Below are positions 2,872-44,731 of a DNA stretch of 64,000 nucleotides, one piece after another. Within the stretch, counting starts at the first letter, position 1; each line of letters starts with the position of its first letter. The notes under the pieces are model-generated. The model was not told where the DNA came from. It saw nothing but the letters and a program-made list of their open reading frames with translations, and searched no databases. The DNA lies in IMG/VR virus record IMGVR_UViG_3300017991_005548, positions 62,001-126,000 of that record; one strand, written 5' to 3'. The translations under genes were made by a program, and so were the position numbers.

Positions 2872-2935
2872 AAAAAACCCCGACCAGAAGTCGGGGCCAA
2901 AATACACGAAAAAAACCCCGACGAATGTCGAGGTT
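2872..2935 (-). terminator. two tandem intrinsic terminators of the Phe attenuator
   Basis: AACCTCGAC-ATTC-GTCGGGGTT+U run (2909-2935) and CCCCGAC-TTCTG-GTCGGGG+U6 (2872-2896). Confidence 0.85.
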
Positions 2936-2973
2936 AAAAAGATCTAAACAACACTTTGATCTAACTACCTCGA

Positions 2974-3018
2974 CTAGAGGTGGCTAAAAAATCGAAAGAT
3001 GTTGTTTAAGTTGTTCAT
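2974..3018 (-). CDS. Phe attenuator leader peptide MNNLNNIFRFFSHL
   Basis: 14 codons, three TTT codons, RBS AAGGA, between promoter and terminators upstream of two tRNA-Phe genes. Confidence 0.8.
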   Translation of the reverse strand: MNNLNNIFRFFSHL

Positions 3019-3043
3019 AATGTAAAATCCTTTTGTTGCCCCT

Positions 3044-3071
3044 ATTATAGGGTATCATCCATGCTTTTCAA
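3044..3071 (-). promoter_or_regulatory. sigma70-like promoter of the tRNA-Phe operon
   Basis: TTGAAA-N16-TATAAT. Confidence 0.8.
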
Positions 3072-3086
3072 GTCAGAACTGCAAAA

Positions 3087-7331: not shown

Positions 7332-7409
7332 TGGTCGGGATAGCTGGATTCGAACCAGCGACTCCTTGACCCCCAGTCAAGTGCTCTAACCAGGCTGAGC
7401 TACATCCCG
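7332..7409 (-). tRNA. tRNA-Pro(GGG)
   Basis: Cloverleaf, loop CTGGGGG, CCA. Confidence 0.95.
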
Positions 7410-7451
7410 ACAATTATTCCGACACTTATCCCGACATTTTGTCGGGATTCA

Positions 7452-7574
7452 GAAAAACGCCAGTGTATTGCTCATTTATACTACCTCACAAAGTTTAGAA
7501 TGCTGAATAGAACCTTATTCAAGTTCACTTTTAATAGTACTGTATGGGTGGGATTCGAACCCACATCTCTGGCT
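7452..7574 (-). ncRNA. circularly permuted tRNA-like RNA 1
   Basis: 3' half (GCCAG, AGAT, T arm GTGGG-TTCGAAT-CCCAC, CCATACA; 7540-7574) precedes 5' half (TGTGAGG, D arm, CTGGC; 7452-7490); linker holds the CAGCA element. Confidence 0.7.
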
Positions 7575-7650
7575 TGGTATCCCCAACGGGAATTGAACCC
7601 GTATCTGTTGGTTGAGAACCAACTATCCTAGACCGTTAGACGATGGGGAC
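7575..7650 (-). tRNA. tRNA-Glu(CTC)
   Basis: Loop TTCTCAA, CCA. Confidence 0.95.
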
Positions 7651-7657
7651 ATTAAAA

Positions 7658-7785
7658 ATGAGTCGGAAGGAATCGAACCTTCATTCCCTGGTTGATTTAT
7701 TAAACATCAAATAGTTGCTGGAACGAAACTTATACAGTTTCACTTGGTTTTATGTCCAGGAGTTCTACCATTAAACTACGACCCA
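7658..7785 (-). ncRNA. tRNA-like gene with CAGCAA element inside the anticodon arm
   Basis: Acceptor TGGGTCG/CGACTCA, D and T arms intact, stem CCTGG/CCAGG enclosing ~60 nt; no CCA. Confidence 0.7.
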
Positions 7786-7805
7786 AGTTGTATCTCTAAT
7801 GAGAT

Positions 7806-7882
7806 TGGTCGGGTATGCAGGATTCGAACCTGCGATCTCATCATCCCAAATGATGCGCCTTACCAGACTAGGCTAATACCCG
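7806..7882 (-). tRNA. tRNA-Pro(TGG)
   Basis: Loop TTTGGGA, CCA. Confidence 0.95.
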
Positions 7883-8055
7883 ATACAGAAGTGTTTTATC
7901 CTGTTAAACTATCCCCAACAAGATCGTACTTTAAGTCATCTGACACTAACTCATTTCTGACCCCAGAATATATTTTATTGTTTTGAATGTCAGTTCGTAA
8001 CAACTACTTTACACTCTTAAGCCGAGGCTGGGACTCGAACCCAGATCTCTCCTTT
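7883..8055 (-). ncRNA. circularly permuted tRNA-like RNA 2
   Basis: 3' half (AGGAG, AGAT, CTGGG-TTCGAGT-CCCAG, CCTCGGC; 8020-8055) precedes 5' half (GTTGGGG, D arm, CTTCT; 7883-7919) with ~100-nt linker. Confidence 0.7.
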
Positions 8056-8146
8056 TGGTGACGCAGACGGGATTCGAACCCGCAAAGGAATCTCTTCCTA
8101 CCAGATTGAAAGTCTGGTTACTTCAGGCCAATTTGTATACTGCGCC
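8056..8146 (-). tRNA. tRNA-Glu(TTC) with long variable arm
   Basis: CCAGA-CTTTCAA-TCTGG; V arm AGGAA-GAGA-TTCCT; CCA. Confidence 0.85.
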
Positions 8147-8152
8147 ATTTTT

Positions 8153-8273
8153 TAGTCAGGACGGCTGGATTCGAACCAACTCCTTTAGCTCCTCAAGCTA
8201 AAATAAATATTGCTGTAGCGAACCTTATTGTCAAGTTCATGTTTATAACGTGCTACCATTACACTACGTCCTG
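8153..8273 (-). ncRNA. tRNA-like gene (C1-G72 body, GAG anticodon) with CAGCAA element between D and anticodon arms
   Basis: CAGGACG/CGTCCTG acceptor, 47-nt insert after D arm, TTAGC-TTGAGGA-GCTAA, ends A-CTA. Confidence 0.7.
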
Positions 8274-8318
8274 ATGGTCTGACCCTCAAAAATCATAAGT
8301 CTGATTCTCGAAAAGTCA

Positions 8319-8397
8319 TGGTCTGGATGGTAGGATTCGAACCTACGCTACTCCTCAGTCCAAGTGAGGCGGGATGACCAGACTTCCCCACATCCAG
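8319..8397 (-). tRNA. tRNA-Pro(TGG)
   Basis: CCTCA-CTTGGAC-TGAGG, CCA. Confidence 0.95.
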
Positions 8398-8427
8398 ATT
8401 AAGTCTTCTAAATTTTCAAAGATCATT

Positions 8428-8503
8428 TGGTGACCCCAGTGGGAATCGAACCCAACCTTCCCAGGATGAAAACCTGGTGTCCTAGCCGATAGACGATGGG
8501 GCC
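8428..8503 (-). tRNA. tRNA-Glu(TTC)
   Basis: CCAGG-TTTTCAT-CCTGG, CCA. Confidence 0.95.
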
Positions 8504-8512
8504 ATGGACAAT

Positions 8513-8578
8513 AAAAAAGCCCTCCTAACGCAAGCTAAGAGGGCACAAAAAAAGCCCTCCCGCTCATGGCAGAAGGGC
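8513..8578 (-). terminator. two tandem intrinsic terminators of the Glu/Pro attenuator
   Basis: GCCCT...AGGGC+U7 (8547-8578) and GCCCTC...GAGGGC+U6 (8513-8544). Confidence 0.8.
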
Positions 8579-8600
8579 CAAAATCATAGTTATGATCTAA

Positions 8601-8678
8601 CTACAGATCGGCTGACCTCCTGCCAAAGGCTGGCGGTTCTTCTCGTTCTGGTTCTCGAATGTACATGTAGTTGTTCAT
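8601..8678 (-). CDS. Glu/Pro attenuator leader peptide MNNYMYIREPEREEPPAFGRRSADL
   Basis: 25 codons with GAA x4 and CCA/CCG x3; RBS AAAGGA. Confidence 0.8.
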   Translation of the reverse strand: MNNYMYIREPEREEPPAFGRRSADL

Positions 8679-8703
8679 AACAAATTTTCCTTTCGTTACC
8701 CCC

Positions 8704-8731
8704 ATTATAAACCATCCTAGAGACTTTTCAA
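8704..8731 (-). promoter_or_regulatory. promoter of the Glu/Pro tRNA operon
   Basis: TTGAAA-N16-TATAAT. Confidence 0.8.
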
Positions 8732-9076: not shown

Positions 9077-9594
9077 TACTTCTGAAAAACTCTTGCTCTT
9101 TTGGCATGAGATTGTCTAGCGGCAACCATTCGTGGATCATCATCAGCCAAACTCAATCCTTGTTCTGCTCCCAAAAGGAAAGAGTCAACGACTTCACGGG
9201 CCAATTTATGATTTTCTCCCCATTCTGGGTTTGTGGCAAATAGAAGGTCAATACCATTCAAAAGAGCCAAAGAGCCTGCTAAGGCCAAAGGGCGTTCGTT
9301 TGGCTTAATTTTACCCTCTGCAACGGCTTTATCGAGGTAATCCTCAACAACAGGGAAAAGAACCTGGGTATAGGTTGCTCCTTGAGAGGTATCAGCGGTT
9401 ACACCTTTGATAACTCCAATAACTTCTTTTACAACTGCCATTTCTTCTGGAGTTGGGTCGTCATAAGCAACCCAGGTTACTGAGGCACCTAAACCTGCGT
9501 TCAGAGCTACTACTTTTGCTTGGCTTGGTGTACAACCAGTTAATGGGATCATCAACATGGCTACGATTGCGGTGAAAAACATACTTCTTTTCAT
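9076..9594 (-). CDS. putative lipoprotein
   Basis: Signal peptide with lipobox LTGC. Confidence 0.65.
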   Translation of the reverse strand: MKRSMFFTAIVAMLMIPLTGCTPSQAKVVALNAGLGASVTWVAYDDPTPEEMAVVKEVIGVIKGVTADTSQGATYTQVLFPVVEDYLDKAVAEGKIKPNERPLALAGSLALLNGIDLLFATNPEWGENHKLAREVVDSFLLGAEQGLSLADDDPRMVAARQSHAKRARVFQK

Positions 9595-10112
9595 TTCAAG
9601 TTCTCCTTATTTTTGGTTAATTTTACTGAAATAAATCTTGGTTCATCTTTTCTACTAGTGACAGTCGCAAAATCAGAGCATTTTTCTACAATTTCGTCCA
9701 TTTTGCTCTTCGCAACATTAATATTTACTCTACGTCTGATCTTCATGGTGAAATGAAGTTCATGGCCATGATCAATAAACTCTTGAGCGTGTTTCATTTT
9801 ATGCTCAACATCATGATCGTCAATCGAAGGAGTAAAACGTATCTCCTTCATCTCATGTTTTTGATCTTTTTGTTGCTTCTTTTGTTTTTTACCTTTTTGA
9901 TATTTCCACTTACCGTAATCAATCAACTTACATAATGGGTTGTTCTTCTCGGTTTCCCCAGAGAAACAAACTAGGTCTAAACCTTTGTCCTGAGCTATCT
10001 CAATAGCATCAAGTGTTTTGATTTCTCTGTGAAATTTGTTATTTTCATCAACCAAATCAAGAATGACGAAGCTTTTGCTGTCAACGACCAAGAACGGTTC
10101 CATGGACTTCAA
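9591..10112 (-). CDS. infC: translation initiation factor IF-3
   Basis: AQDKGLDLV...CKLIDYGKWKYQ...KEIRFTPSIDDHD signature. Confidence 0.9.
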   Translation of the reverse strand: MKSMEPFLVVDSKSFVILDLVDENNKFHREIKTLDAIEIAQDKGLDLVCFSGETEKNNPLCKLIDYGKWKYQKGKKQKKQQKDQKHEMKEIRFTPSIDDHDVEHKMKHAQEFIDHGHELHFTMKIRRRVNINVAKSKMDEIVEKCSDFATVTSRKDEPRFISVKLTKNKENLK

Positions 10113-10984: not shown

Positions 10985-11348
10985 TTAGCTCATCCAGAGG
11001 AACATTATTTTTTCTAGCTTTTTCTCTGATGTTATGAGCAAACATATTAGCGGACTCAACGAAGTTTTTTAATTCTTCGATATTATTGGATTCCAAAGTG
11101 CCAATCCATGTTGCTATTGGCTGATTGCAGGAACATTTGATTACACAACTTCCATGAACATGATCTACTTCCAATTCAAGGAACTCAAACTCAGTGCAAT
11201 CTTCTAAATGTTGTTTAATATCTTCTTCGAAACTCATGAGAATTGAACTTTTTTCTTTGAAATAATAGACTTTGTGCAAAAATGTATTTATATCGATAAT
11301 CCCTTCTGCACGTAATTTAATAAGACGATCTAATTCTTTAGAGTCCAT
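10923..11348 (-). CDS. hypothetical protein
   Basis: ORF track. Confidence 0.5.
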   Translation of the reverse strand: MDSKELDRLIKLRAEGIIDINTFLHKVYYFKEKSSILMSFEEDIKQHLEDCTEFEFLELEVDHVHGSCVIKCSCNQPIATWIGTLESNNIEELKNFVESANMFAHNIREKARKNNVPLDELIEPLLGFCFEDLNFEAYTDG

Positions 11349-11370
11349 TATAGCTGTTTTGAAAATGTTT

Positions 11371-11712
11371 TCAAGTTTCGTTGCTTCTTACCCATTCAGG
11401 CACTTCGCCTTCTTCCCAACGGATAGCTCTGTCCAAATCTTCTTGAGTGGGCATCAGAATATTGTTTGATATCATATAATTCTGCCAATCTTCCCCAAAC
11501 TGTTCTCGGCATAAAGCTTGACCCCAATCAAACAACTCTCCTGAAATTGAGTAAACGGTATTCCCATGTTTCTCATTCATTCTCTTGACCCATTCAAAAA
11601 CACCTAATACTACTTGTTTTTGCTGTTCTTCGAGACTCATTTGATCTACTGCTTCTTCTACTACCTCATTTGATTCTTGAGTAATGTCCATTTTTTCCTC
11701 AATGGTTTTCAA
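11371..11712 (-). CDS. hypothetical protein
   Basis: ORF track. Confidence 0.6.
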   Translation of the reverse strand: MKTIEEKMDITQESNEVVEEAVDQMSLEEQQKQVVLGVFEWVKRMNEKHGNTVYSISGELFDWGQALCREQFGEDWQNYMISNNILMPTQEDLDRAIRWEEGEVPEWVRSNET

Positions 11713-27538: not shown

Positions 27539-28210
27539 CTATCCCAACCATTTGTCTCTTTTAAATCCACCTATTTCTTGAATGCCTCCCATAATTTTTT
27601 GTTTTATTTCAACGCTGTGTAATCTTACTGTGCAAATTCCGTATTTTAGTTTACCCTGAAATTCGCTAGATTTAAAATAACATTTTCTCAAATTTTCTTT
27701 CGTCAAACTAAGTGCATTAAGCCAAAATTCAACAATCTCTTGTTCAGAAACTCCATTGTTTGTATAGGCATTTATAGAAAGAGCAAATCTTTTTTCTTCA
27801 AACTCAAAGTGTTCTCTAAGGAACTTCATAAAAAGAATCATCATGTCAATATCGCTATTGCAGAATGTCACTCCTTTATTGGATTCTTTTGTTCCTTCTG
27901 CCCAATAAAGAATACAGCCAACCCGAAAACTTTCAGATATTTTAGCAAGTGCTCTTCCATCAGTTTGCCACTTCCTTCTTTTTCTTCTGAATTTTTCCGA
28001 ATATTTCTCCTGTTTACCAAAATAACCACCTTTTCTTGTTTTTGTCCTGTGCCGCAATTTTAGGTTTTCTATTTGTTCTTTCGTTAGTTGAATATCTCGA
28101 ACCCATAAACTAACAGACGATTGAGACACATCTAGAATCTTGGCTATTTTCTTTATAGATTGTCCACTTTTTCTTAGTTCTCTTGCTTTGTTTCTTTCGA
28201 CTTTTTTCAT
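27539..28210 (-). mobile_element. HTH + LAGLIDADG-like putative homing endonuclease inside tRNA operon
   Basis: N-terminal HTH (GQSIKKIAKILDVSQSSVSLW), LYWAEG, FCNSD; likely start MKK at 28210. Confidence 0.6.
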
Positions 28211-29576: not shown

Positions 29577-29584
29577 TCAGGCAC

Positions 29585-29617
29585 AAAAAAAGCCCAAGCT
29601 CCTTAGAGCCTGGGCTT
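29585..29617 (-). terminator. attenuator terminator of the Arg-led tRNA operon
   Basis: AAGCCCAGGCTC-TAAG-GAGCTTGGGCTT + U run. Confidence 0.85.
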
Positions 29618-29635
29618 CGTAAATCTGCTTATCTA

Positions 29636-29716
29636 TCAGAACATGCGATAGCGCAGATCAGAAGCCCTGTGGCTCCAATCGCGTCTAATAATATGCATGT
29701 CTCTAACAACGTTCAT
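29636..29716 (-). CDS. multi-amino-acid attenuator leader peptide MNVVRDMHIIRRDWSHRASDLRYRMF
   Basis: 26 codons; RBS AAGGA; residues 3-14 are only V,R,D,M,H,I,W. Confidence 0.8.
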   Translation of the reverse strand: MNVVRDMHIIRRDWSHRASDLRYRMF

Positions 29717-29813
29717 TTTTCTTAAATCCTTATTCGATTTAGTTTTTCAACTTACCCTCATTAGTCACATTTGATTTGAGTTTTTCTCAGATCTGTACCA
29801 AGAAGTTATTATC

Positions 29814-29841
29814 ATTATAAGCCTTATTCAGAGTATTTCAA
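29814..29841 (-). promoter_or_regulatory. promoter of the Arg-led tRNA operon
   Basis: TTGAAA-N16-TATAAT. Confidence 0.8.
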
Positions 29842-29867
29842 GTCGTCTTTGAAGATTTTCTTGAATT

Positions 29868-34094: not shown

Positions 34095-34111
34095 AAAGTT
34101 AAAAATCGGAA

Positions 34112-34459
34112 CAGGTTAGCAATTTTGGTTTTCATTTCAAGTGAAAGTTTTGGTTGCTGTAACTAACCTTCTATCCTAAATTAAAAATTTGAACAGACTG
34201 ACTTGTTTTTTTTAGCATAAAAAATTTTGAGTTGCTGAATGCAGTCTTATATCAAATTGTTTTTCTAAATTTTCCTTTTTCTTGTTTTCAAAGAAACAAG
34301 TGAAACAGCTTGGGTTTTCCATCCTTTATTTCAGACCTCGATGAATTTGGGTCCTCAAATTTATTTTTAAAACCCTCTCGACTGGGTTCTCGTTTTATTT
34401 CTGTCAGGGCGACTCTGACGCTCGTTTTATCGTGTTTTTTGGTTGCAGTAACCAAGCTT
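34112..34459 (-). ncRNA. structured leader with three CAGCAA elements and anticodon-loop mimics
   Basis: AAG-N8-C(A/T)GCAA at 34154-70, 34232-48, 34443-59, each closed by a helix+CTG; TTTCA-CTTGAAA-TGAAA and T6-ATGCTAA-A6 hairpins. Confidence 0.7.
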
Positions 34460-34477
34460 TATTCAGTTGTTGGTTCC

Positions 34478-34505
34478 ATTATAAGGATTACGAAAAACTT
34501 TTCAA
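34478..34505 (-). promoter_or_regulatory. promoter of TROVE leader
   Basis: TTGAAA-N16-TATAAT. Confidence 0.8.
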
Positions 34506-34534
34506 GTCGGTTTTGAATATTTTTTTTGAATTTT

Positions 34535-40473: not shown

Positions 40474-40678
40474 TCACCATTATACAGCCAAGATTAGTAT
40501 CAAAGTAACTAAGTCCATATTCTTCCAGAACTTCTAGGACCAGTTCCCTCATTTTAAGGGAATTTCCTGTAACAACCTCAAAAGGAGGGTCATAATTAAA
40601 AATATGAGAGTCAAGTAAAGACCGAACATCTTGATGCTTAACCCCATGTAAATCTAACTTCATTTTCCGTGTAACCAA
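40451..40678 (-). CDS. Smr-domain-like small protein
   Basis: LDLHG...VVTGNS motif. Confidence 0.6.
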   Translation of the reverse strand: MVTRKMKLDLHGVKHQDVRSLLDSHIFNYDPPFEVVTGNSLKMRELVLEVLEEYGLSYFDTNLGCIMVIEEPNKR

Positions 40679-41325
40679 CCCTTCCGATTATGAGTCTCTT
40701 TCATTTGAACCTCTTCGGAAGGGACATAAAGACAGTGGTCCTGGATATATCGTTGAACTTCTTCGTCCAAATATGGCAAAAAGTCTGATCTGCCATGTTT
40801 TTTGAAGTGATCTCTTGCCATAGTAGACGAACATTCGGTAATTTTGTCTTCTACGTCCAAGAAAAGATGGGGAGGATTCTTATACCATCGATATTTCTTC
40901 TTCAATTCGATTCCACTTCTTGTTACAACAACAAATTTGGCAATTTCCCGTAATTTTTTGAAATTATGCCAGTTAATGAAGTTGTTTACGTTGTCAGCAC
41001 CAATGATAAAACTGATATCAACATCAAGTTGTGGGTCTTTGAGGAGGGTTTGGACTAATTCGAAGGTCGAACCACTCAGTTCATGTCTAATTTCGTAATC
41101 AAATACATGAAGTTTCGGATTTTTTCTGCAAGCGATAGCGCACATCCTGAGTCTGTGTAAATTAAGCTCTAAATTCTTACCAAATCGATGTTTATTGCAA
41201 GGCAAGAGCCAAACTTCATCAAATTTTCCTTTTTCAAGGACAAATTCAGCTACTTGTATATGAGCAAGTGTTGGGGGATTGAAAGCCCCGCCAAGAATGG
41301 CAATTTTAGTCATAGTTTTCTCCAA
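40660..41325 (-). CDS. nadD: nicotinate/nicotinamide mononucleotide adenylyltransferase
   Basis: GGAFNPPTLAH, FIIGADN...W, CSSTMAR. Confidence 0.9.
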   Translation of the reverse strand: MEKTMTKIAILGGAFNPPTLAHIQVAEFVLEKGKFDEVWLLPCNKHRFGKNLELNLHRLRMCAIACRKNPKLHVFDYEIRHELSGSTFELVQTLLKDPQLDVDISFIIGADNVNNFINWHNFKKLREIAKFVVVTRSGIELKKKYRWYKNPPHLFLDVEDKITECSSTMARDHFKKHGRSDFLPYLDEEVQRYIQDHCLYVPSEEVQMKETHNRKGWLHGK

Positions 41326-41428: not shown

Positions 41429-41562
41429 TGGACAAGACGGGATTCGAACCCGCAAATCGAGATGCCTCACCCATTGCTTAGGAGAAAAATAACTCCTGCC
41501 CATGGTAGCGACATTACTCTTAAGACCAGAGCCTCAACTTTGCCAATTTAAGTTACTTGCCC
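41429..41562 (-). ncRNA. tRNA-like RNA with branched ~75-nt insert replacing the anticodon loop
   Basis: GGGCAAG/CTTGTCC acceptor, D arm, T arm GCGGG-TTCGAAT-CCCGT; two inserted hairpins; no CCA. Confidence 0.65.
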
Positions 41563-41576
41563 GTCTTGTCAAATTT

Positions 41577-41698
41577 TGGCGGATGAGGTAGGATTCGAAC
41601 CTACACTGTAGCGGTTTCTGTTTTTTGGTTGCTGAAGAGAACCTTTTTGTCAAGTTCATTTTTTGGACCGCCGTCTCTGCCAGTTGGACTACTCATCC
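41577..41698 (-). ncRNA. tRNA-like gene with CAGCAA element in the anticodon loop
   Basis: GGATGAG/CTCATCC-GCCA; stem GCGGT/ACCGC encloses 51 nt. Confidence 0.75.
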
Positions 41699-41951: not shown

Positions 41952-42689
41952 TTATACCCCAAAAATCAATAATTCAAAATCGCCATTCTCATGTTCTACG
42001 ATTGCAGAGCAATGCTCTACCCAATCTCCGCAGTTATAGTAGTCAATCCCATCAATTTTTTTGATTATAGGAGAATGAACATGACCACATATAACTCCAT
42101 CGCAATGATTCTCTTTGGCATACTCTGAAAGGAGACCTTCAAACTCTCCAACATAAGTAACAGCTTTTTTAAAATTTTCCCTGGCAAACTTTGATAAACG
42201 AACTCTTTTCACTCCGAACATCCTTAAACATCTTGCCAGGAACTCATTCATTGAAACAAGAGTGTCATAACCCCAACTTCCAACCTTTGAGATCATGACT
42301 CCAATTCTTGAAAAAAGAATGAAATCAAACTTATCTCCATGAGTGATGTAATACTTCTTTCCAAAACTGTGATAATATGTTTCTTTACAAATTTCCAGGT
42401 TCGGATAATGAAAACTGTCCAAAAGTTCCATCATACCATGATCATGATTTCCTAAAACATAATGGACGTTACAGTGTTTTGACATTTTTAGAAGTCTTCT
42501 AATGACTTCTGTTTGGTTTTTATCCCATTTAGTTCTGTCTAATCTCCAAAGATCAAAGATATCTCCGATAAGATATAAATTGTCACATTCAGTCTCTTTT
42601 AGGAATTTAAGTAGTTCTTTAGATTTGCATCCAACACTGGCCATGTGGCAGTCTGAGATGAATACTGCTCGGTACTTAGTTTTACTCAT
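41952..42689 (-). CDS. LpxH-like calcineurin-type metallophosphoesterase
   Basis: FISDCH, GDIFD, GNHD, THGD, GHVH, NCGDW; likely start MSKTK at 42689. Confidence 0.85.
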   Translation of the reverse strand: MSKTKYRAVFISDCHMASVGCKSKELLKFLKETECDNLYLIGDIFDLWRLDRTKWDKNQTEVIRRLLKMSKHCNVHYVLGNHDHGMMELLDSFHYPNLEICKETYYHSFGKKYYITHGDKFDFILFSRIGVMISKVGSWGYDTLVSMNEFLARCLRMFGVKRVRLSKFARENFKKAVTYVGEFEGLLSEYAKENHCDGVICGHVHSPIIKKIDGIDYYNCGDWVEHCSAIVEHENGDFELLIFGV

Positions 42690-42777
42690 ATTTTTCCTCC
42701 TATAAGTAGTAAGGAATAATACTGAGAAAACAGGATAAAACCTACTCAATAATGAGTTGTTAACCAAGTATTAATAT

Positions 42778-42868
42778 TGGCAGAGGGAGTGGGACTCGAA
42801 CCCACAAACCGCATTTCTACAGCTTACATGATTTCAAATCAAGCTCTTCATCCAGCCAGATTCCCTCC
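42778..42868 (-). tRNA. tRNA-Ser(TGA), divergent
   Basis: CTTGA-TTTGAAA-TCATG, long V arm, G73 CCA. Confidence 0.75.
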
Positions 42869-42874
42869 ATTGAT

Positions 42875-43225: not shown

Positions 43226-43236
43226 AATAAATTTAA

Positions 43237-43304
43237 TGGAGCTAATGAGATTCGAACTCATCCCCCTGCCTCTATGGGCAGTTCGGCTACCGTCTAGTAA
43301 CCCC
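43237..43304 (-). ncRNA. degenerate tRNA-like RNA with G3:U70 acceptor
   Basis: GGGGTTA/TAGCTCC-A, T arm ATGAG-TTCGAAT-CTCAT, 6-nt loop CATAGA, poor D arm. Confidence 0.5.
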
Positions 43305-44213: not shown

Positions 44214-44233
44214 TTGGCTATCAATTAAGCCAT

Positions 44234-44266
44234 AAAAAAACCCCGTTCGGAAAACCGAACGGGGTT
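44234..44266 (-). terminator. attenuator terminator of the Cys/Tyr/Leu/Ser tRNA operon
   Basis: AACCCCGTTCGG-TTTT-CCGAACGGGGTT + U run. Confidence 0.9.
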
Positions 44267-44284
44267 GAAAACCGAGTTAAGAAC

Positions 44285-44362
44285 TTACGTTCTCTGGACG
44301 CACAACCCCGTCCATCTCAAACTGAGATATGATGAACATAGGCTGAGCGATAAAGATTTCAT
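44285..44362 (-). CDS. Ser/Leu/Cys/Tyr attenuator leader peptide MKSLSLSLCSSYLSLRWTGLCVQRT
   Basis: 25 codons; residues 3-15 are only S,L,C,Y; RBS AGGA. Confidence 0.8.
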   Translation of the reverse strand: MKSLSLSLCSSYLSLRWTGLCVQRT

Positions 44363-44401
44363 TATAAGTTCTTTCCTGTTAAAAATTCAAATTACAACCC
44401 T

Positions 44402-44429
44402 ATTATAAACTGGATCTGAAGCTTTTCAA
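44402..44429 (-). promoter_or_regulatory. promoter of the Cys/Tyr/Leu/Ser tRNA operon
   Basis: TTGAAA-N16-TATAAT. Confidence 0.8.
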
Positions 44430-44731
44430 GTTGAAAACGCAATTATTTCAAATTTTTCTTTTTCTTTCAGCCATTCGTACTCATGAAGGTAAGGGTTATC
44501 GTAGAAAATAATTGGATACTTTCCACCACCAGTACATATTGGGACAACATTATAGGATAGCCATTCAGTCGCCTCTTCAAAATCCATCCCTTCTCCCATG
44601 AACTTCTGCAACATAAGTTCATAAGAATAAATAAGTTCATCTCTTATGGTGATGCCAACAACACAATTGTCCAAATCATCTAGTTTAATGGTCCCATCAT
44701 CACATTCTTCCAATATTTTTTGAATATCCAT
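44426..44731 (-). CDS. hypothetical phage protein
   Basis: ORF track. Confidence 0.55.
   Translation of the reverse strand: MDIQKILEECDDGTIKLDDLDNCVVGITIRDELIYSYELMLQKFMGEGMDFEEATEWLSYNVVPICTGGGKYPIIFYDNPYLHEYEWLKEKEKFEIIAFST

What the first reader, a model, noticed from the sequence alone, without database searches (positions are those of the whole stretch)
8513..8731. Glu/Pro attenuator
Leader MNNYMYIREPEREEPPAFGRRSADL has GAA x4 and CCA/CCG x3 in codons 9-16. TGGCAGGAGG (8616-8625) pairs with CCTTCTGCCA (8567-8576) of the first of two terminators. Downstream lie three tRNA-Glu and three tRNA-Pro genes. The PP dipeptide could also make it EF-P-sensitive (inference).
Basis: partly seen in the sequence, partly recalled or inferred. 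Interest (0 to 1): 0.83.

Follow-up and report, generated by a model that had tools for sequence, protein, structure and literature searches.

The report
Codon-sensing switch gating phage tRNA genes
A 25-codon leader rich in Glu and Pro codons, followed by two terminators, most likely turns on a huge phage's Glu/Pro tRNA genes only when those codons are read slowly; the same design recurs for other amino acids and in unrelated phages, and I found no published description of it.

Summary
These are a near-consensus promoter (8731-8704), a Shine-Dalgarno site, the ORF MNNYMYIREPEREEPPAFGRRSADL (8678-8601), two intrinsic terminators (8579-8553, 8544-8519) and a tRNA array starting 8 nt later. The 10-bp antiterminator pairing is real (0 of 1000 shuffles match it).

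The finding is one of a family. The same phage has four more such leaders, three in the window and one outside it. Each leader is enriched in the amino acids of the tRNAs downstream: Phe; Arg/Trp/Ile/Val/Asp/Met/His; Ser/Leu/Cys/Tyr; Gln/Asn. The true leader-to-array pairing ranks 1 of 120.

Two diverged metagenomic relatives keep the Glu/Pro leader and its antiterminator, with compensatory changes. The unrelated megaphage LR756501 and cultured Caulobacter phiCbK-like phages show the same design.

Ribosome-position folding puts the switch point just after the cognate codon block in each of the eight leaders modelled.

Best reading: trp/pheST-type ribosome-mediated attenuation applied to tRNA operons. 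It would act as feedback on decoding capacity. No experiment exists, and nine literature searches found no description.

Novelty: new variant of a known kind. Interest is high.

The parts
8704..8731 (-). Promoter: -35 TTGAAA (8731-8726), 16-nt spacer, -10 TATAAT (8709-8704). It belongs to a phage-wide consensus, CTTGAAA-N16-TATAAT.
   Evidence: 11 of 12 matches; 6 exact copies in the window against 0.27 expected; 4 of them precede tRNA-array leaders.
8688..8693 (-). Shine-Dalgarno-like AAAGGA, 9 nt upstream of the ATG
   Evidence: Read from the sequence. Other genes in the window use similar GGAG/AGGA sites.
8601..8678 (-). Leader ORF, 25 codons plus TAG: MNNYMYIREPEREEPPAFGRRSADL*
   Evidence: Homologous ORFs occur in relatives L117 (MNSYINLQNEREEPPTFDRRLM*) and L121 (MNNNITIEQPEQEPPAFGWRTVE*).
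8631..8654 (-). Sensor block, codons 9-16: GAA CCA GAA CGA GAA GAA CCG CCA. These are cognate to tRNA-Glu(UUC) and tRNA-Pro(UGG) of the array.
   Evidence: 7 of 24 residues are Glu/Pro against a 10% background, P=9e-3. GAA is 69% of Glu codons and CCA 52% of Pro codons in the phage's ORFs.
8607..8625 (-). Antiterminator 5' strand. UGGCAGGAGG (8625-8616) pairs with 8576-8567; GCCGA (8612-8608) pairs with 8581-8577.
   Evidence: -20.9 kcal/mol; 0 of 1000 shuffles; 29 of 30 cells paired in 3 homologues, 2 double changes.
8546..8579 (-). Terminator 1: stem-loop 8579-8553 plus T run 8552-8546. Its 5' arm is the antiterminator's partner.
   Evidence: 11 pairs, 7 G-C. (-17 to -18 kcal/mol).
8513..8544 (-). 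Terminator 2: stem-loop 8544-8519 plus T run 8518-8513. Its 5' arm can pair with the 3' arm of terminator 1 (a relay).
   Evidence: the 4:5 duplex is -18.1 kcal/mol and forms with P 0.72-0.86 in snapshots where the antiterminator holds terminator 1's 5' arm.
7332..8503 (-). Regulated tRNA array: Glu(UUC) 8503-8428, Pro(UGG) 8397-8319, insertion-bearing tRNA-like 8273-8156, Glu(UUC) 8146-8056, Pro(UGG) 7882-7806, insertion-bearing tRNA-like 7785-7658, Glu(CUC) 7650-7575, Pro(GGG) 7409-7332.
2872..3072 (-). Paralogous Phe attenuator: promoter 3072-3044, ORF MNNLNNIFRFFSHL* 3018-2974, terminators 2935-2914 and 2898-2876, then tRNA-Phe x2 (2868-2713).
29577..29842 (-). Paralogous multi-amino-acid attenuator: promoter 29842-29814, ORF MNVVRDMHIIRRDWSHRASDLRYRMF* 29716-29636, terminator 29618-29589. 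Then Arg x4, Trp, Ile x2, Val, Asp x2, Met (29576-28269) and His (27526-27452).
44232..44430 (-). Paralogous Ser/Leu/Cys/Tyr attenuator: promoter 44430-44402, ORF MKSLSLSLCSSYLSLRWTGLCVQRT* 44362-44285, terminator 44266-44239. Then Cys x2, Tyr x2, Leu x5 and Ser tRNAs (44105-41332; Ser(GGA) at 39729-39638).

Best explanation
This is a ribosome-mediated (leader-peptide) transcription attenuator of the trp/his/pheST type, placed in front of a tRNA operon of a huge phage.

Proposed sequence of events:
1. Transcription starts at the strong promoter at 8731-8704.
2. A ribosome loads on the leader ORF and follows the polymerase.
3. If GAA (Glu) and CCA/CCG (Pro) codons are decoded quickly, the ribosome passes codon 16 and reaches the stop. 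It then covers UGGCAGGAGG (8625-8616), terminator 1 folds, and transcription stops before the tRNA genes.
4. If those codons are decoded slowly because usable tRNA-Glu or tRNA-Pro is scarce, the ribosome stalls in codons 9-15 and the antiterminator strand stays free.
5. The free strand captures the 5' arm of terminator 1. The freed 3' arm of terminator 1 in turn captures the 5' arm of terminator 2. The polymerase reads through into the Glu/Pro tRNA genes.
6. The new tRNAs relieve the stall and shut the operon off again, which is negative feedback on decoding capacity.

What is shown: the parts, their spacing, the alternative pairings, their conservation, and the match between codons and tRNAs.

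What is inferred: that the ORF is translated, that control is kinetic, and that the physiological signal is tRNA supply (for example host tRNA loss during infection or cleavage by host anticodon nucleases) rather than amino-acid supply.
For: Architecture. The promoter, Shine-Dalgarno site, 25-codon ORF, two terminators and the first tRNA 8 nt later are all present.

Antiterminator. It is -20.9 to -22.0 kcal/mol and 0 of 1000 shuffles match it. For the three other leaders in the window, 0 of 1000 shuffles match either.

Geometry. In snapshots of the RNA downstream of a ribosome, the antiterminator is formed (P 0.98) with the A site on codons 2-15. It falls to 0.66 at codon 16, 0.35 at 17 and 0.20 from 18 on. 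The same switch, right after the cognate block, appears in the Phe, Arg-group and Ser/Leu leaders. It also appears in L074, L117 and L121.

Codon-tRNA match.
- Five leaders of this one genome are each enriched in the amino acids of their own array (P 2e-2, 9e-3, 2e-5, 2e-5, 8e-5).
- The true assignment ranks 1 of 120.
- 24 of 27 anticodon species have a cognate codon in their own leader, including 10 of 10 for Ser/Leu/Cys/Tyr.

A confirmed prediction. I expected the amino acids missing from the window to have their own leaders elsewhere in the genome. A Gln/Asn leader, MSVQVQQNNQNNQ..., turned up in front of tRNA-Gln, Asn, Asn.

Relatives. Two metagenomic relatives, whose neighbouring DHH proteins are 74% and 69% identical to the window's, keep an E/P-rich leader before Glu/Pro tRNAs. 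They keep the 10-bp pairing in 29 of 30 cells, with 7 of 10 pairs varying and 2 double compensatory changes.

Independent lineages.
- Megaphage LR756501 has three such leaders: Met/Gln/Ile/Glu; Leu, using all six Leu codons; and Lys/His/Ser/Phe/Trp.
- Cultured Caulobacter phage CcrBL9 and other phiCbK-like phages have MSK.YRQFVRQIQ.VR... before Val/Ile/Gln/Asn/Arg/Phe arrays. This is conserved in more than 35 records.
- In that family the terminator is 98% paired and the antiterminator 93% paired, including a GC/AU double change inside the coding strand.

Combined over 10 leaders, Fisher P is about 1e-25.

Tandem terminators. The 3' arm of terminator 1 pairs with the 5' arm of terminator 2 (-18.1 kcal/mol here, -17.2 in the Phe leader).
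Against: - There is no experimental evidence of any kind: no transcript ends, no ribosome footprints, no host.
- At equilibrium the full-length RNA favours the terminators in most ribosome positions. The model therefore needs kinetic control, as in trp, and that cannot be tested here.
- Only 7 of 24 codons are Glu/Pro, the weakest enrichment but one in the family.
- The two CGA (Arg) codons inside the block are unexplained.
- The Glu(CUC) and Pro(GGG) isoacceptors have no cognate codon in the leader.
- Without any ribosome the antiterminator forms (P 0.98), so untranslated transcripts would read through. This differs from trp.
- Bypass of terminator 2 by the relay is inferred from complementarity alone.
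- Leaders were first recognised by eye, so the P values carry some selection. Within each promoter-terminator gap, however, the Shine-Dalgarno/ATG ORF is essentially the only candidate.
- With three homologues the covariation test is not significant on its own (52 of 500 shuffles).
- In phiCbK the conserved leader keeps Arg and Asn codons although that phage's array lacks those tRNAs.
Confidence: 0.8

Rival explanations
1. The same attenuator hardware is present, but the physiological signal is amino-acid supply (charging of tRNA-Glu/Pro), as in classical biosynthetic attenuators, rather than tRNA abundance.
For: A stalled ribosome cannot distinguish a missing tRNA from an uncharged one. All known leader-peptide attenuators are described as reporting charged tRNA (textbook knowledge of trp, his, leu, thr, ilv and pheST). 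The hardware evidence is the same as for the best explanation.
Against: Making more tRNA does not relieve amino-acid starvation, so the feedback loop would not close. The leaders sample individual isoacceptors of the array: all 10 anticodon species in the Ser/Leu/Cys/Tyr leader and all six Leu codons in LR756501. That fits sensing of tRNA species better than sensing of amino acids.
Confidence: 0.1
2. The stall is sequence-specific. The Pro-Pro pair (codons 15-16) makes the leader an EF-P-dependent arrest element, and the operon reports EF-P activity or general elongation stress rather than Glu/Pro decoding.
For: E-P-P is conserved in both relatives (EEPPAF, EEPPTF, QEPPAF). A ribosome held with Pro15 or Pro16 in the A site sits at the last positions that still leave the antiterminator largely free (P 0.98 and 0.66).
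Against: The other leaders of the same genome (Phe, Arg group, Ser/Leu, Gln/Asn) have no Pro-Pro and follow the identity of their own arrays. Pro codons are expected here simply because the array encodes tRNA-Pro.
Confidence: 0.04
3. The small ORF is not translated and the match to the tRNAs is chance. The two hairpins are constitutive, leaky terminators or processing or stability elements at the 5' end of a tRNA precursor.
For: Short ORFs are common by chance (250 ORFs of at least 20 aa in 16 kb). No expression data exist. The full-length equilibrium fold keeps terminator 2.
Against: Ten leaders in three lineages match their arrays (Fisher P about 1e-25). The true assignment ranks first in each genome. 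Antiterminator complementarity is beyond shuffles in all eight leaders tested. The ORF, its cognate codons and the pairing are conserved in diverged relatives.
Confidence: 0.04
4. The terminated leader RNA or the 25-aa peptide is the product and acts in trans (as reported for rnTrpL/peTrpL in Sinorhizobium). The tRNAs are only passively downstream.
For: Trans-acting attenuator RNAs and leader peptides exist (abstracts of PMC6614838 and PMC7298713, listed). The promoter is very strong.
Against: Peptide sequences are not conserved between paralogous leaders except in their cognate-codon content. This reading does not explain the codon-tRNA correspondence, and it does not exclude attenuation.
Confidence: 0.02

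Closest known systems
E. coli pheST attenuator (pheM leader) and pheA attenuator (pheL leader)
   Same: A short leader ORF with a run of Phe codons, an alternative antiterminator/terminator pair, and ribosome stalling that relieves termination. pheST is the classical case where a component of the translation apparatus is the regulated product. From memory, the pheM peptide ([14 protein letters not shown]) resembles the window's Phe leader MNNLNNIFRFFSHL. pheL is described in PMC3082878.
   Different: There the regulated genes encode a synthetase or a biosynthetic enzyme. Here they are the cognate tRNAs themselves, in a phage, and they start a few nucleotides after the terminator with no coding gene. 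The resemblance to pheM is recalled, not tested.
trp, his, leu, thr and ilvGMEDA leader-peptide attenuators of enterobacteria
   Same: The logic of regions 1 to 4 and kinetic coupling of ribosome and polymerase. thr (Thr+Ile) and ilvGMEDA (Ile/Val/Leu) show that one leader can report several amino acids. The Phe and Ser/Leu leaders here also have a 1:2-type hairpin that sequesters the antiterminator in untranslated RNA.
   Different: Up to seven amino acids and ten anticodon species are sampled in one leader. The Glu/Pro and Arg-group leaders lack a 1:2 protector, so untranslated RNA would read through. Two of the leaders have tandem terminators linked by a relay pairing.
T-box riboswitches
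   Same: Transcription attenuation that reports the state of a specific tRNA and controls genes of the translation apparatus.
   Different: T-boxes bind uncharged tRNA directly through a specifier codon and the T-box sequence, without translation. Rfam finds no T-box or any other cis-regulatory family here. T-boxes control synthetases and transporters, not tRNA genes.
Known control of bacterial tRNA operons (growth-rate and stringent control at the promoter by ppGpp/DksA and Fis)
   Same: It regulates the output of tRNA operons.
   Different: That control is global and acts at initiation. Here control would be post-initiation and specific to each amino-acid group. This comparison rests on textbook knowledge and was not tested.

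Membership tests
Ribosome-mediated (leader-peptide) transcription attenuator | Short ORF with a ribosome-binding site and start codon between the promoter and the first structural gene | tested here: met
   AAAGGA-9 nt-ATG. A 25-codon ORF at 8678-8601 lies between the promoter at 8731-8704 and the tRNA at 8503.
Ribosome-mediated (leader-peptide) transcription attenuator | Regulatory codons in the leader correspond to the end product of the operon | tested here: met
   7 of 8 consecutive codons are Glu/Pro, before Glu/Pro tRNAs. Five leaders of the genome match their arrays (rank 1 of 120). Ten leaders in three lineages give Fisher P about 1e-25.
Ribosome-mediated (leader-peptide) transcription attenuator | Intrinsic terminator between the leader and the regulated genes | tested here: met
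   Two terminators at 8579-8553 and 8544-8519, each with a T run.
Ribosome-mediated (leader-peptide) transcription attenuator | A mutually exclusive antiterminator uses the terminator's 5' arm | tested here: met
   8625-8616 pairs with 8576-8567, -20.9 to -22.0 kcal/mol, 0 of 1000 shuffles.
Ribosome-mediated (leader-peptide) transcription attenuator | Spacing such that a ribosome stalled at the regulatory codons leaves the antiterminator free, and one that completes the ORF masks it | tested here: met
   Snapshot folding: P(antiterminator) is 0.98 for A-site codons 2-15 and 0.20 from codon 18 to the stop. The footprint of -15/+12 nt around the A site is an assumption.
Ribosome-mediated (leader-peptide) transcription attenuator | Conservation or covariation of the ORF and of the alternative helices in homologues | tested here: inconclusive
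   Three homologues: 29 of 30 cells paired, 2 double changes. The shuffle control is not significant with so few sequences (52 of 500). The analogous phiCbK-family element gives clearer support.
Ribosome-mediated (leader-peptide) transcription attenuator | Read-through depends on translation of the leader and on the supply of the cognate charged tRNA | not testable with these tools
   Needs reporter assays, term-seq or ribosome profiling, or a defined in-vitro system.
T-box riboswitch | Stem I with a specifier loop, and the conserved T-box sequence in the antiterminator bulge | tested here: not met
   No Rfam T-box hit at the gathering threshold or at E up to 1. The leader is only about 190 nt and holds an ORF instead.

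The most novel reading that the evidence does not exclude
Large phages organise their tRNA genes into amino-acid-specific regulons. Each is gated by a 'codon-barcode' leader peptide that samples the very isoacceptors encoded downstream. The phage therefore makes replacement tRNAs on demand, for example when host tRNAs are degraded or cut by anticodon-nuclease defences, and stops when decoding recovers. This would be a previously undescribed, widespread mode of tRNA gene regulation. It is present in at least three unrelated phage lineages, including cultured Caulobacter phages.
Probability: 0.6. Interest if true: 0.95.

Novelty: new variant of a known kind. Interest (0 to 1): 0.9.

Why it matters
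tRNA genes are usually thought to be controlled globally at their promoters, and phage tRNAs are usually discussed only as codon-usage supplements or as decoys against host nucleases. This design would give a phage a separate closed-loop sensor for each group of tRNAs, reading decoding speed directly on the ribosome.

It would explain two things: why tRNAs in some huge phages are grouped by amino acid, and why strong terminators sit directly in front of them.

It offers a natural reporter for the availability of single tRNA isoacceptors in vivo.

It links phage tRNA arrays to the current question of how phages survive host tRNA-cleaving defences.

The same design is present in phiCbK-like phages of Caulobacter crescentus, so it can be tested directly in a standard laboratory system.

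Tried and rejected
- Equilibrium folding of the whole leader with a ribosome footprint did not discriminate, because terminators win thermodynamically. I replaced it with snapshots of the nascent RNA before the terminator's 3' arm is made.
- A search of viral contigs with the shared 5'-UTR pattern found only the same genome on two contigs.
- Relatives found through the metallophosphatase embedded in the Ser/Leu array carry no tRNAs. The 172-aa neighbour gave only self hits.
- A search with the LR756501 terminator pattern gave nothing. BLAST of arrays against the phage collection hit only tRNAs.
- Controls for universality were negative. A T5-like coliphage and a Flavobacterium phage show no terminator-then-tRNA leader architecture. 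tRNA-Leu(UAA) of LR756501 simply follows a gene's terminator. So the design is lineage-restricted.
- CcrBL9 gp149 and phiCbK gp083 (an A/S/T/P/L-rich ORF before the Pro/Lys/Leu/Ser array) score well. I do not rely on them, because that composition is common in high-GC DNA, the leader keeps Thr/Ala/His codons where the tRNAs are absent, and I saw no clear antiterminator.
- I tried to identify the insertion-bearing tRNA-like genes, to see whether they explain the CGA codons here or the Gln codons in L121. ARAGORN calls them Gln, Cys, Asp and Ser with weak stems, so they are not usable.
- A loose motif search for the insertion element was not above chance.
- Rfam shows no known cis-regulatory RNA.
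- Nine full-text literature searches found no description of leader peptides or attenuators before tRNA genes. The phiCbK genome paper annotates only 'terminator' there. The 2019 attenuation review could not be read.

Full report
**What is there**

On the minus strand the window reads, in order:
- a near-consensus promoter, TTGAAA-16-TATAAT, at 8731-8704 (11 of 12 matches);
- an AAAGGA Shine-Dalgarno site;
- an ATG at 8678 opening a 25-codon ORF, MNNYMYIREPEREEPPAFGRRSADL, with its stop at 8603-8601;
- two intrinsic terminators, 8579-8553 and 8544-8519, each with a T run;
- tRNA-Glu(UUC), starting 8 nt after the second T run.

The array down to 7332 holds three tRNA-Glu, three tRNA-Pro and two tRNA-like genes with insertions. 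Codons 9-16 are GAA CCA GAA CGA GAA GAA CCG CCA.

**It is one of a family in the same genome**

The window carries at least 34 tRNA genes on this strand, grouped by amino acid. Six promoters share the extended consensus CTTGAAA-N16-TATAAT against 0.27 expected, and four of them precede tRNA arrays. Behind each of those four lies a small ORF with a Shine-Dalgarno site, one or two terminators and then tRNAs.

| Leader peptide | tRNAs downstream |
|---|---|
| MNNLNNIFRFFSHL | tRNA-Phe x2 |
| the Glu/Pro leader | Glu x3, Pro x3 |
| MNVVRDMHIIRRDWSHRASDLRYRMF | Arg x4, Trp, Ile x2, Val, Asp x2, Met, His |
| MKSLSLSLCSSYLSLRWTGLCVQRT | Cys x2, Tyr x2, Leu x5, Ser x5 (four anticodons) |

I predicted that amino acids missing from the window would have their own leaders elsewhere in the genome. 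A promoter-pattern search then found a fifth on the same 476-kb contig: MSVQVQQNNQNNQALEGFGRLFSA, then a terminator, then tRNA-Gln, Asn, Asn.

Each leader is enriched in the amino acids of its own array, with binomial P from 2e-2 to 2e-5. The true leader-to-array assignment ranks 1 of 120. 24 of 27 anticodon species have a cognate codon in their own leader, 10 of 10 for the Ser/Leu/Cys/Tyr leader.

**Structure and geometry**

All four leaders in the window have a strand inside or just after the ORF that is complementary to the terminator's 5' arm. Duplex energies are -14.9 to -25.9 kcal/mol, and 0 of 1000 shuffles match in each case.

Folding the complete leader at equilibrium favours the terminators. 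As in trp, the choice must therefore be kinetic.

I folded only the RNA that lies downstream of a ribosome and has been made before the terminator's 3' arm appears. In that snapshot the antiterminator is formed while the A site is in the cognate block and is lost immediately after it. For Glu/Pro, P is 0.98 up to codon 15, 0.66 at 16, 0.35 at 17 and 0.20 from 18. The Phe leader switches at codons 12-13, the Arg group at 11-14 and Ser/Leu at 14-15.

The Phe and Ser/Leu leaders also have a hairpin that hides the antiterminator in untranslated RNA. The Glu/Pro and Arg-group leaders do not.

Where there are two terminators (Glu/Pro and Phe), their stems are near-duplicates. The 3' arm of terminator 1 can therefore pair with the 5' arm of terminator 2 (-18.1 and -17.2 kcal/mol). 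This forms with P 0.72-0.87 once the antiterminator holds terminator 1's 5' arm. It is a plausible relay that lets one decision open both terminators, and it is inferred only.

**Relatives of this phage**

The window comes from a huge phage, assembled as IMG/VR contigs of 476 and 296 kb and as ENA/JGI contigs of about 524 kb. It has no close relative among deposited phages.

Using the DHH-family gene between the two arrays as an anchor, a metagenome scan found two diverged relatives with tRNAs.
- L117 (DHH protein 74% identical to the window's) has MNSYINLQNEREEPPTFDRRLM, one terminator, then Glu(UUC) and Pro(UGG). It also has MKRINNKFFRFIFTRLSS, one terminator, then Phe x2.
- L121 (69% identical) has MNNNITIEQPEQEPPAFGWRTVE, two terminators, then Glu and Pro and an insertion-bearing tRNA-like gene.

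In both relatives the antiterminator sits at the same codons (F-G/D-R/W-R). Seven pairs vary and two change on both sides (U-A to C-G, A-U to U-A). Partners slid by 1-3 columns pair in only 40-63% of cells. With three sequences the shuffle control is not significant (52 of 500), so this is supportive rather than decisive. Shuffle tests and ribosome snapshots give the same picture in the relatives and in the Gln/Asn leader.

**Unrelated phages**

The 735-kb megaphage LR756501 was hit only through a tRNA. It also groups tRNAs by amino acid and has three leaders of this kind.
- MNFRIINMIQEQMQQIQNLIGGTISY precedes Met/Gln/Ile/Glu tRNAs.
- MNNILHINLLNSLCLLGIKLIG, using all six Leu codons, precedes five tRNA-Leu.
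- MLQTSKHSKHFSSSSKWFTTFGVETDLLCVS precedes Trp, Arg, His x2, Phe, Lys, Ser and others.
Each has a terminator whose 5' arm matches a strand at the end of the ORF.

The cultured Caulobacter phage CcrBL9 has MSKMYRQFVRQIQSVRVNRTGLSRMVDGGTFI, a terminator, and then Val, Ile, Val, Gln, Asn, Arg, Phe. This element is conserved in more than 35 phiCbK-like Caulobacter and Brevundimonas phage records.

In nine aligned members of that family the terminator is 98% paired and the antiterminator 93% paired. That includes a GC/AU double change whose 5' partner lies inside the coding sequence.

The fit there is not perfect. phiCbK keeps Arg and Asn codons in the leader although its array lacks those tRNAs.

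The phiCbK genome paper annotates only a terminator at this place and reports no RNA elements other than tRNAs (PMC3556154).

A T5-like coliphage and a Flavobacterium phage lack the architecture, so it is lineage-restricted.

**Mechanism and rivals**

The best-supported mechanism is classical ribosome-mediated attenuation. Slow decoding of GAA or CCA/CCG stalls the ribosome in codons 9-15, the antiterminator forms, and the polymerase reads into the tRNA genes. Fast decoding lets the ribosome cover the antiterminator, and transcription ends.

Because the products are the tRNAs that read the sensor codons, the loop is a negative feedback on decoding capacity. That the signal is tRNA supply rather than amino-acid supply is an inference from this logic and from the isoacceptor-by-isoacceptor sampling in the larger leaders.

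GAA and CCA are also the phage's preferred Glu and Pro codons, at 69% and 52%.

The rivals are less likely:
- amino-acid sensing;
- an EF-P-specific Pro-Pro arrest;
- a chance ORF with leaky terminators;
- a trans-acting leader product.
The family-wide codon-tRNA correspondence argues against the last three. Only experiments can separate the first from the best explanation.

**Comparison with known systems**

The mechanism belongs to the leader-peptide attenuator class. All sequence-level defining features are met. Covariation is inconclusive for this locus, and the functional criterion is untestable here.

It is not a T-box, since Rfam gives no hit.

The closest known case in logic is pheST/pheM, a translation component under a Phe-codon leader. 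Multi-amino-acid leaders are known from thr and ilvGMEDA.

Four things are new:
- the target, which is tRNA operons;
- the breadth of some sensors, up to seven amino acids and ten anticodons;
- the tandem-terminator relay;
- the setting in phages.

Nine full-text searches found no description. The library does not cover most subscription journals, so prior description cannot be excluded.

**Verdict**

It is a new variant of a known kind, of high interest, and directly testable in Caulobacter/phiCbK or in E. coli reporters.

Noticed in passing
window 7658-7785(-), 8156-8273(-), 41429-41562(-), 41580-41698(-); also about 7500-7545(-); L121 5831-5952; L004 about 2170-2300: tRNA-like genes (Rfam tRNA, 35-47 bits) carry 40-65 nt insertions in or next to the anticodon arm. 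Several insertions share a small hairpin, GAACUUGACAAUAAGGUUC, followed by CAGCAA. They are too short for group I introns. ARAGORN's identities for them are inconsistent (Gln, Cys, Asp, Ser). A similar insertion occurs in megaphage LR756501.
   Followed up: partly
window 34100-34506(-): A sixth copy of the consensus promoter is followed by about 400 nt without a convincing ORF. The stretch contains repeats of a GGTTA.T.CAGCAACCAAAA-like motif related to the tRNA insertion element. It may be a non-coding RNA.
   Followed up: no
window 8631-8654(-) and 2986-2997(-); L121 5391-5414: CGA (Arg) codons sit inside the Glu/Pro sensor block (two) and the Phe block (one), although neither array has a recognised tRNA-Arg. 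In relative L121 the corresponding positions are Gln codons, and ARAGORN weakly calls the insertion-bearing tRNA there Gln(UUG). This is unexplained.
   Followed up: partly
window 9591-10112(-), 40660-41310(-), 41952-42692(-), 27539-28210(-): The phage encodes an IF3 homologue 0.9 kb upstream of the Glu/Pro leader. A cytidylyltransferase (NadD-like) gene and a calcineurin-like phosphoesterase gene are embedded in the Ser/Leu tRNA operon. A helix-turn-helix protein gene lies between tRNA-Met and tRNA-His (Pfam).
   Followed up: partly
L015 24243-24333(-) (LR756501): A tRNA with anticodon UUA, which would read the UAA stop codon, sits inside the Lys/His/Ser/Phe/Trp array of megaphage LR756501.
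   Followed up: no
window 11347-11375(-): A consensus promoter whose -10 box overlaps the ATG of the next ORF (TATAATGGAC...), which suggests a leaderless or nearly leaderless mRNA.
   Followed up: no
window 42781-42869(-), 43234-43304(-): Further weak tRNA-like matches inside the Ser/Leu array: a tRNA-Sec model at 38 bits, probably a class II Ser-type tRNA, and a tmRNA model at 18.5 bits. ARAGORN did not call them.
   Followed up: no
L016 18402-18521 (CcrBL9 gp149); L018 706-843 (phiCbK gp083): An annotated 'hypothetical protein' of 39-45 aa directly upstream of the Pro/Thr/Lys/Leu/His/Ala/Ser/Trp array is made almost only of those amino acids (33 of 38 in CcrBL9). It may be a second tRNA-array leader in phiCbK-like phages, but high-GC composition bias is not excluded.
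   Followed up: partly
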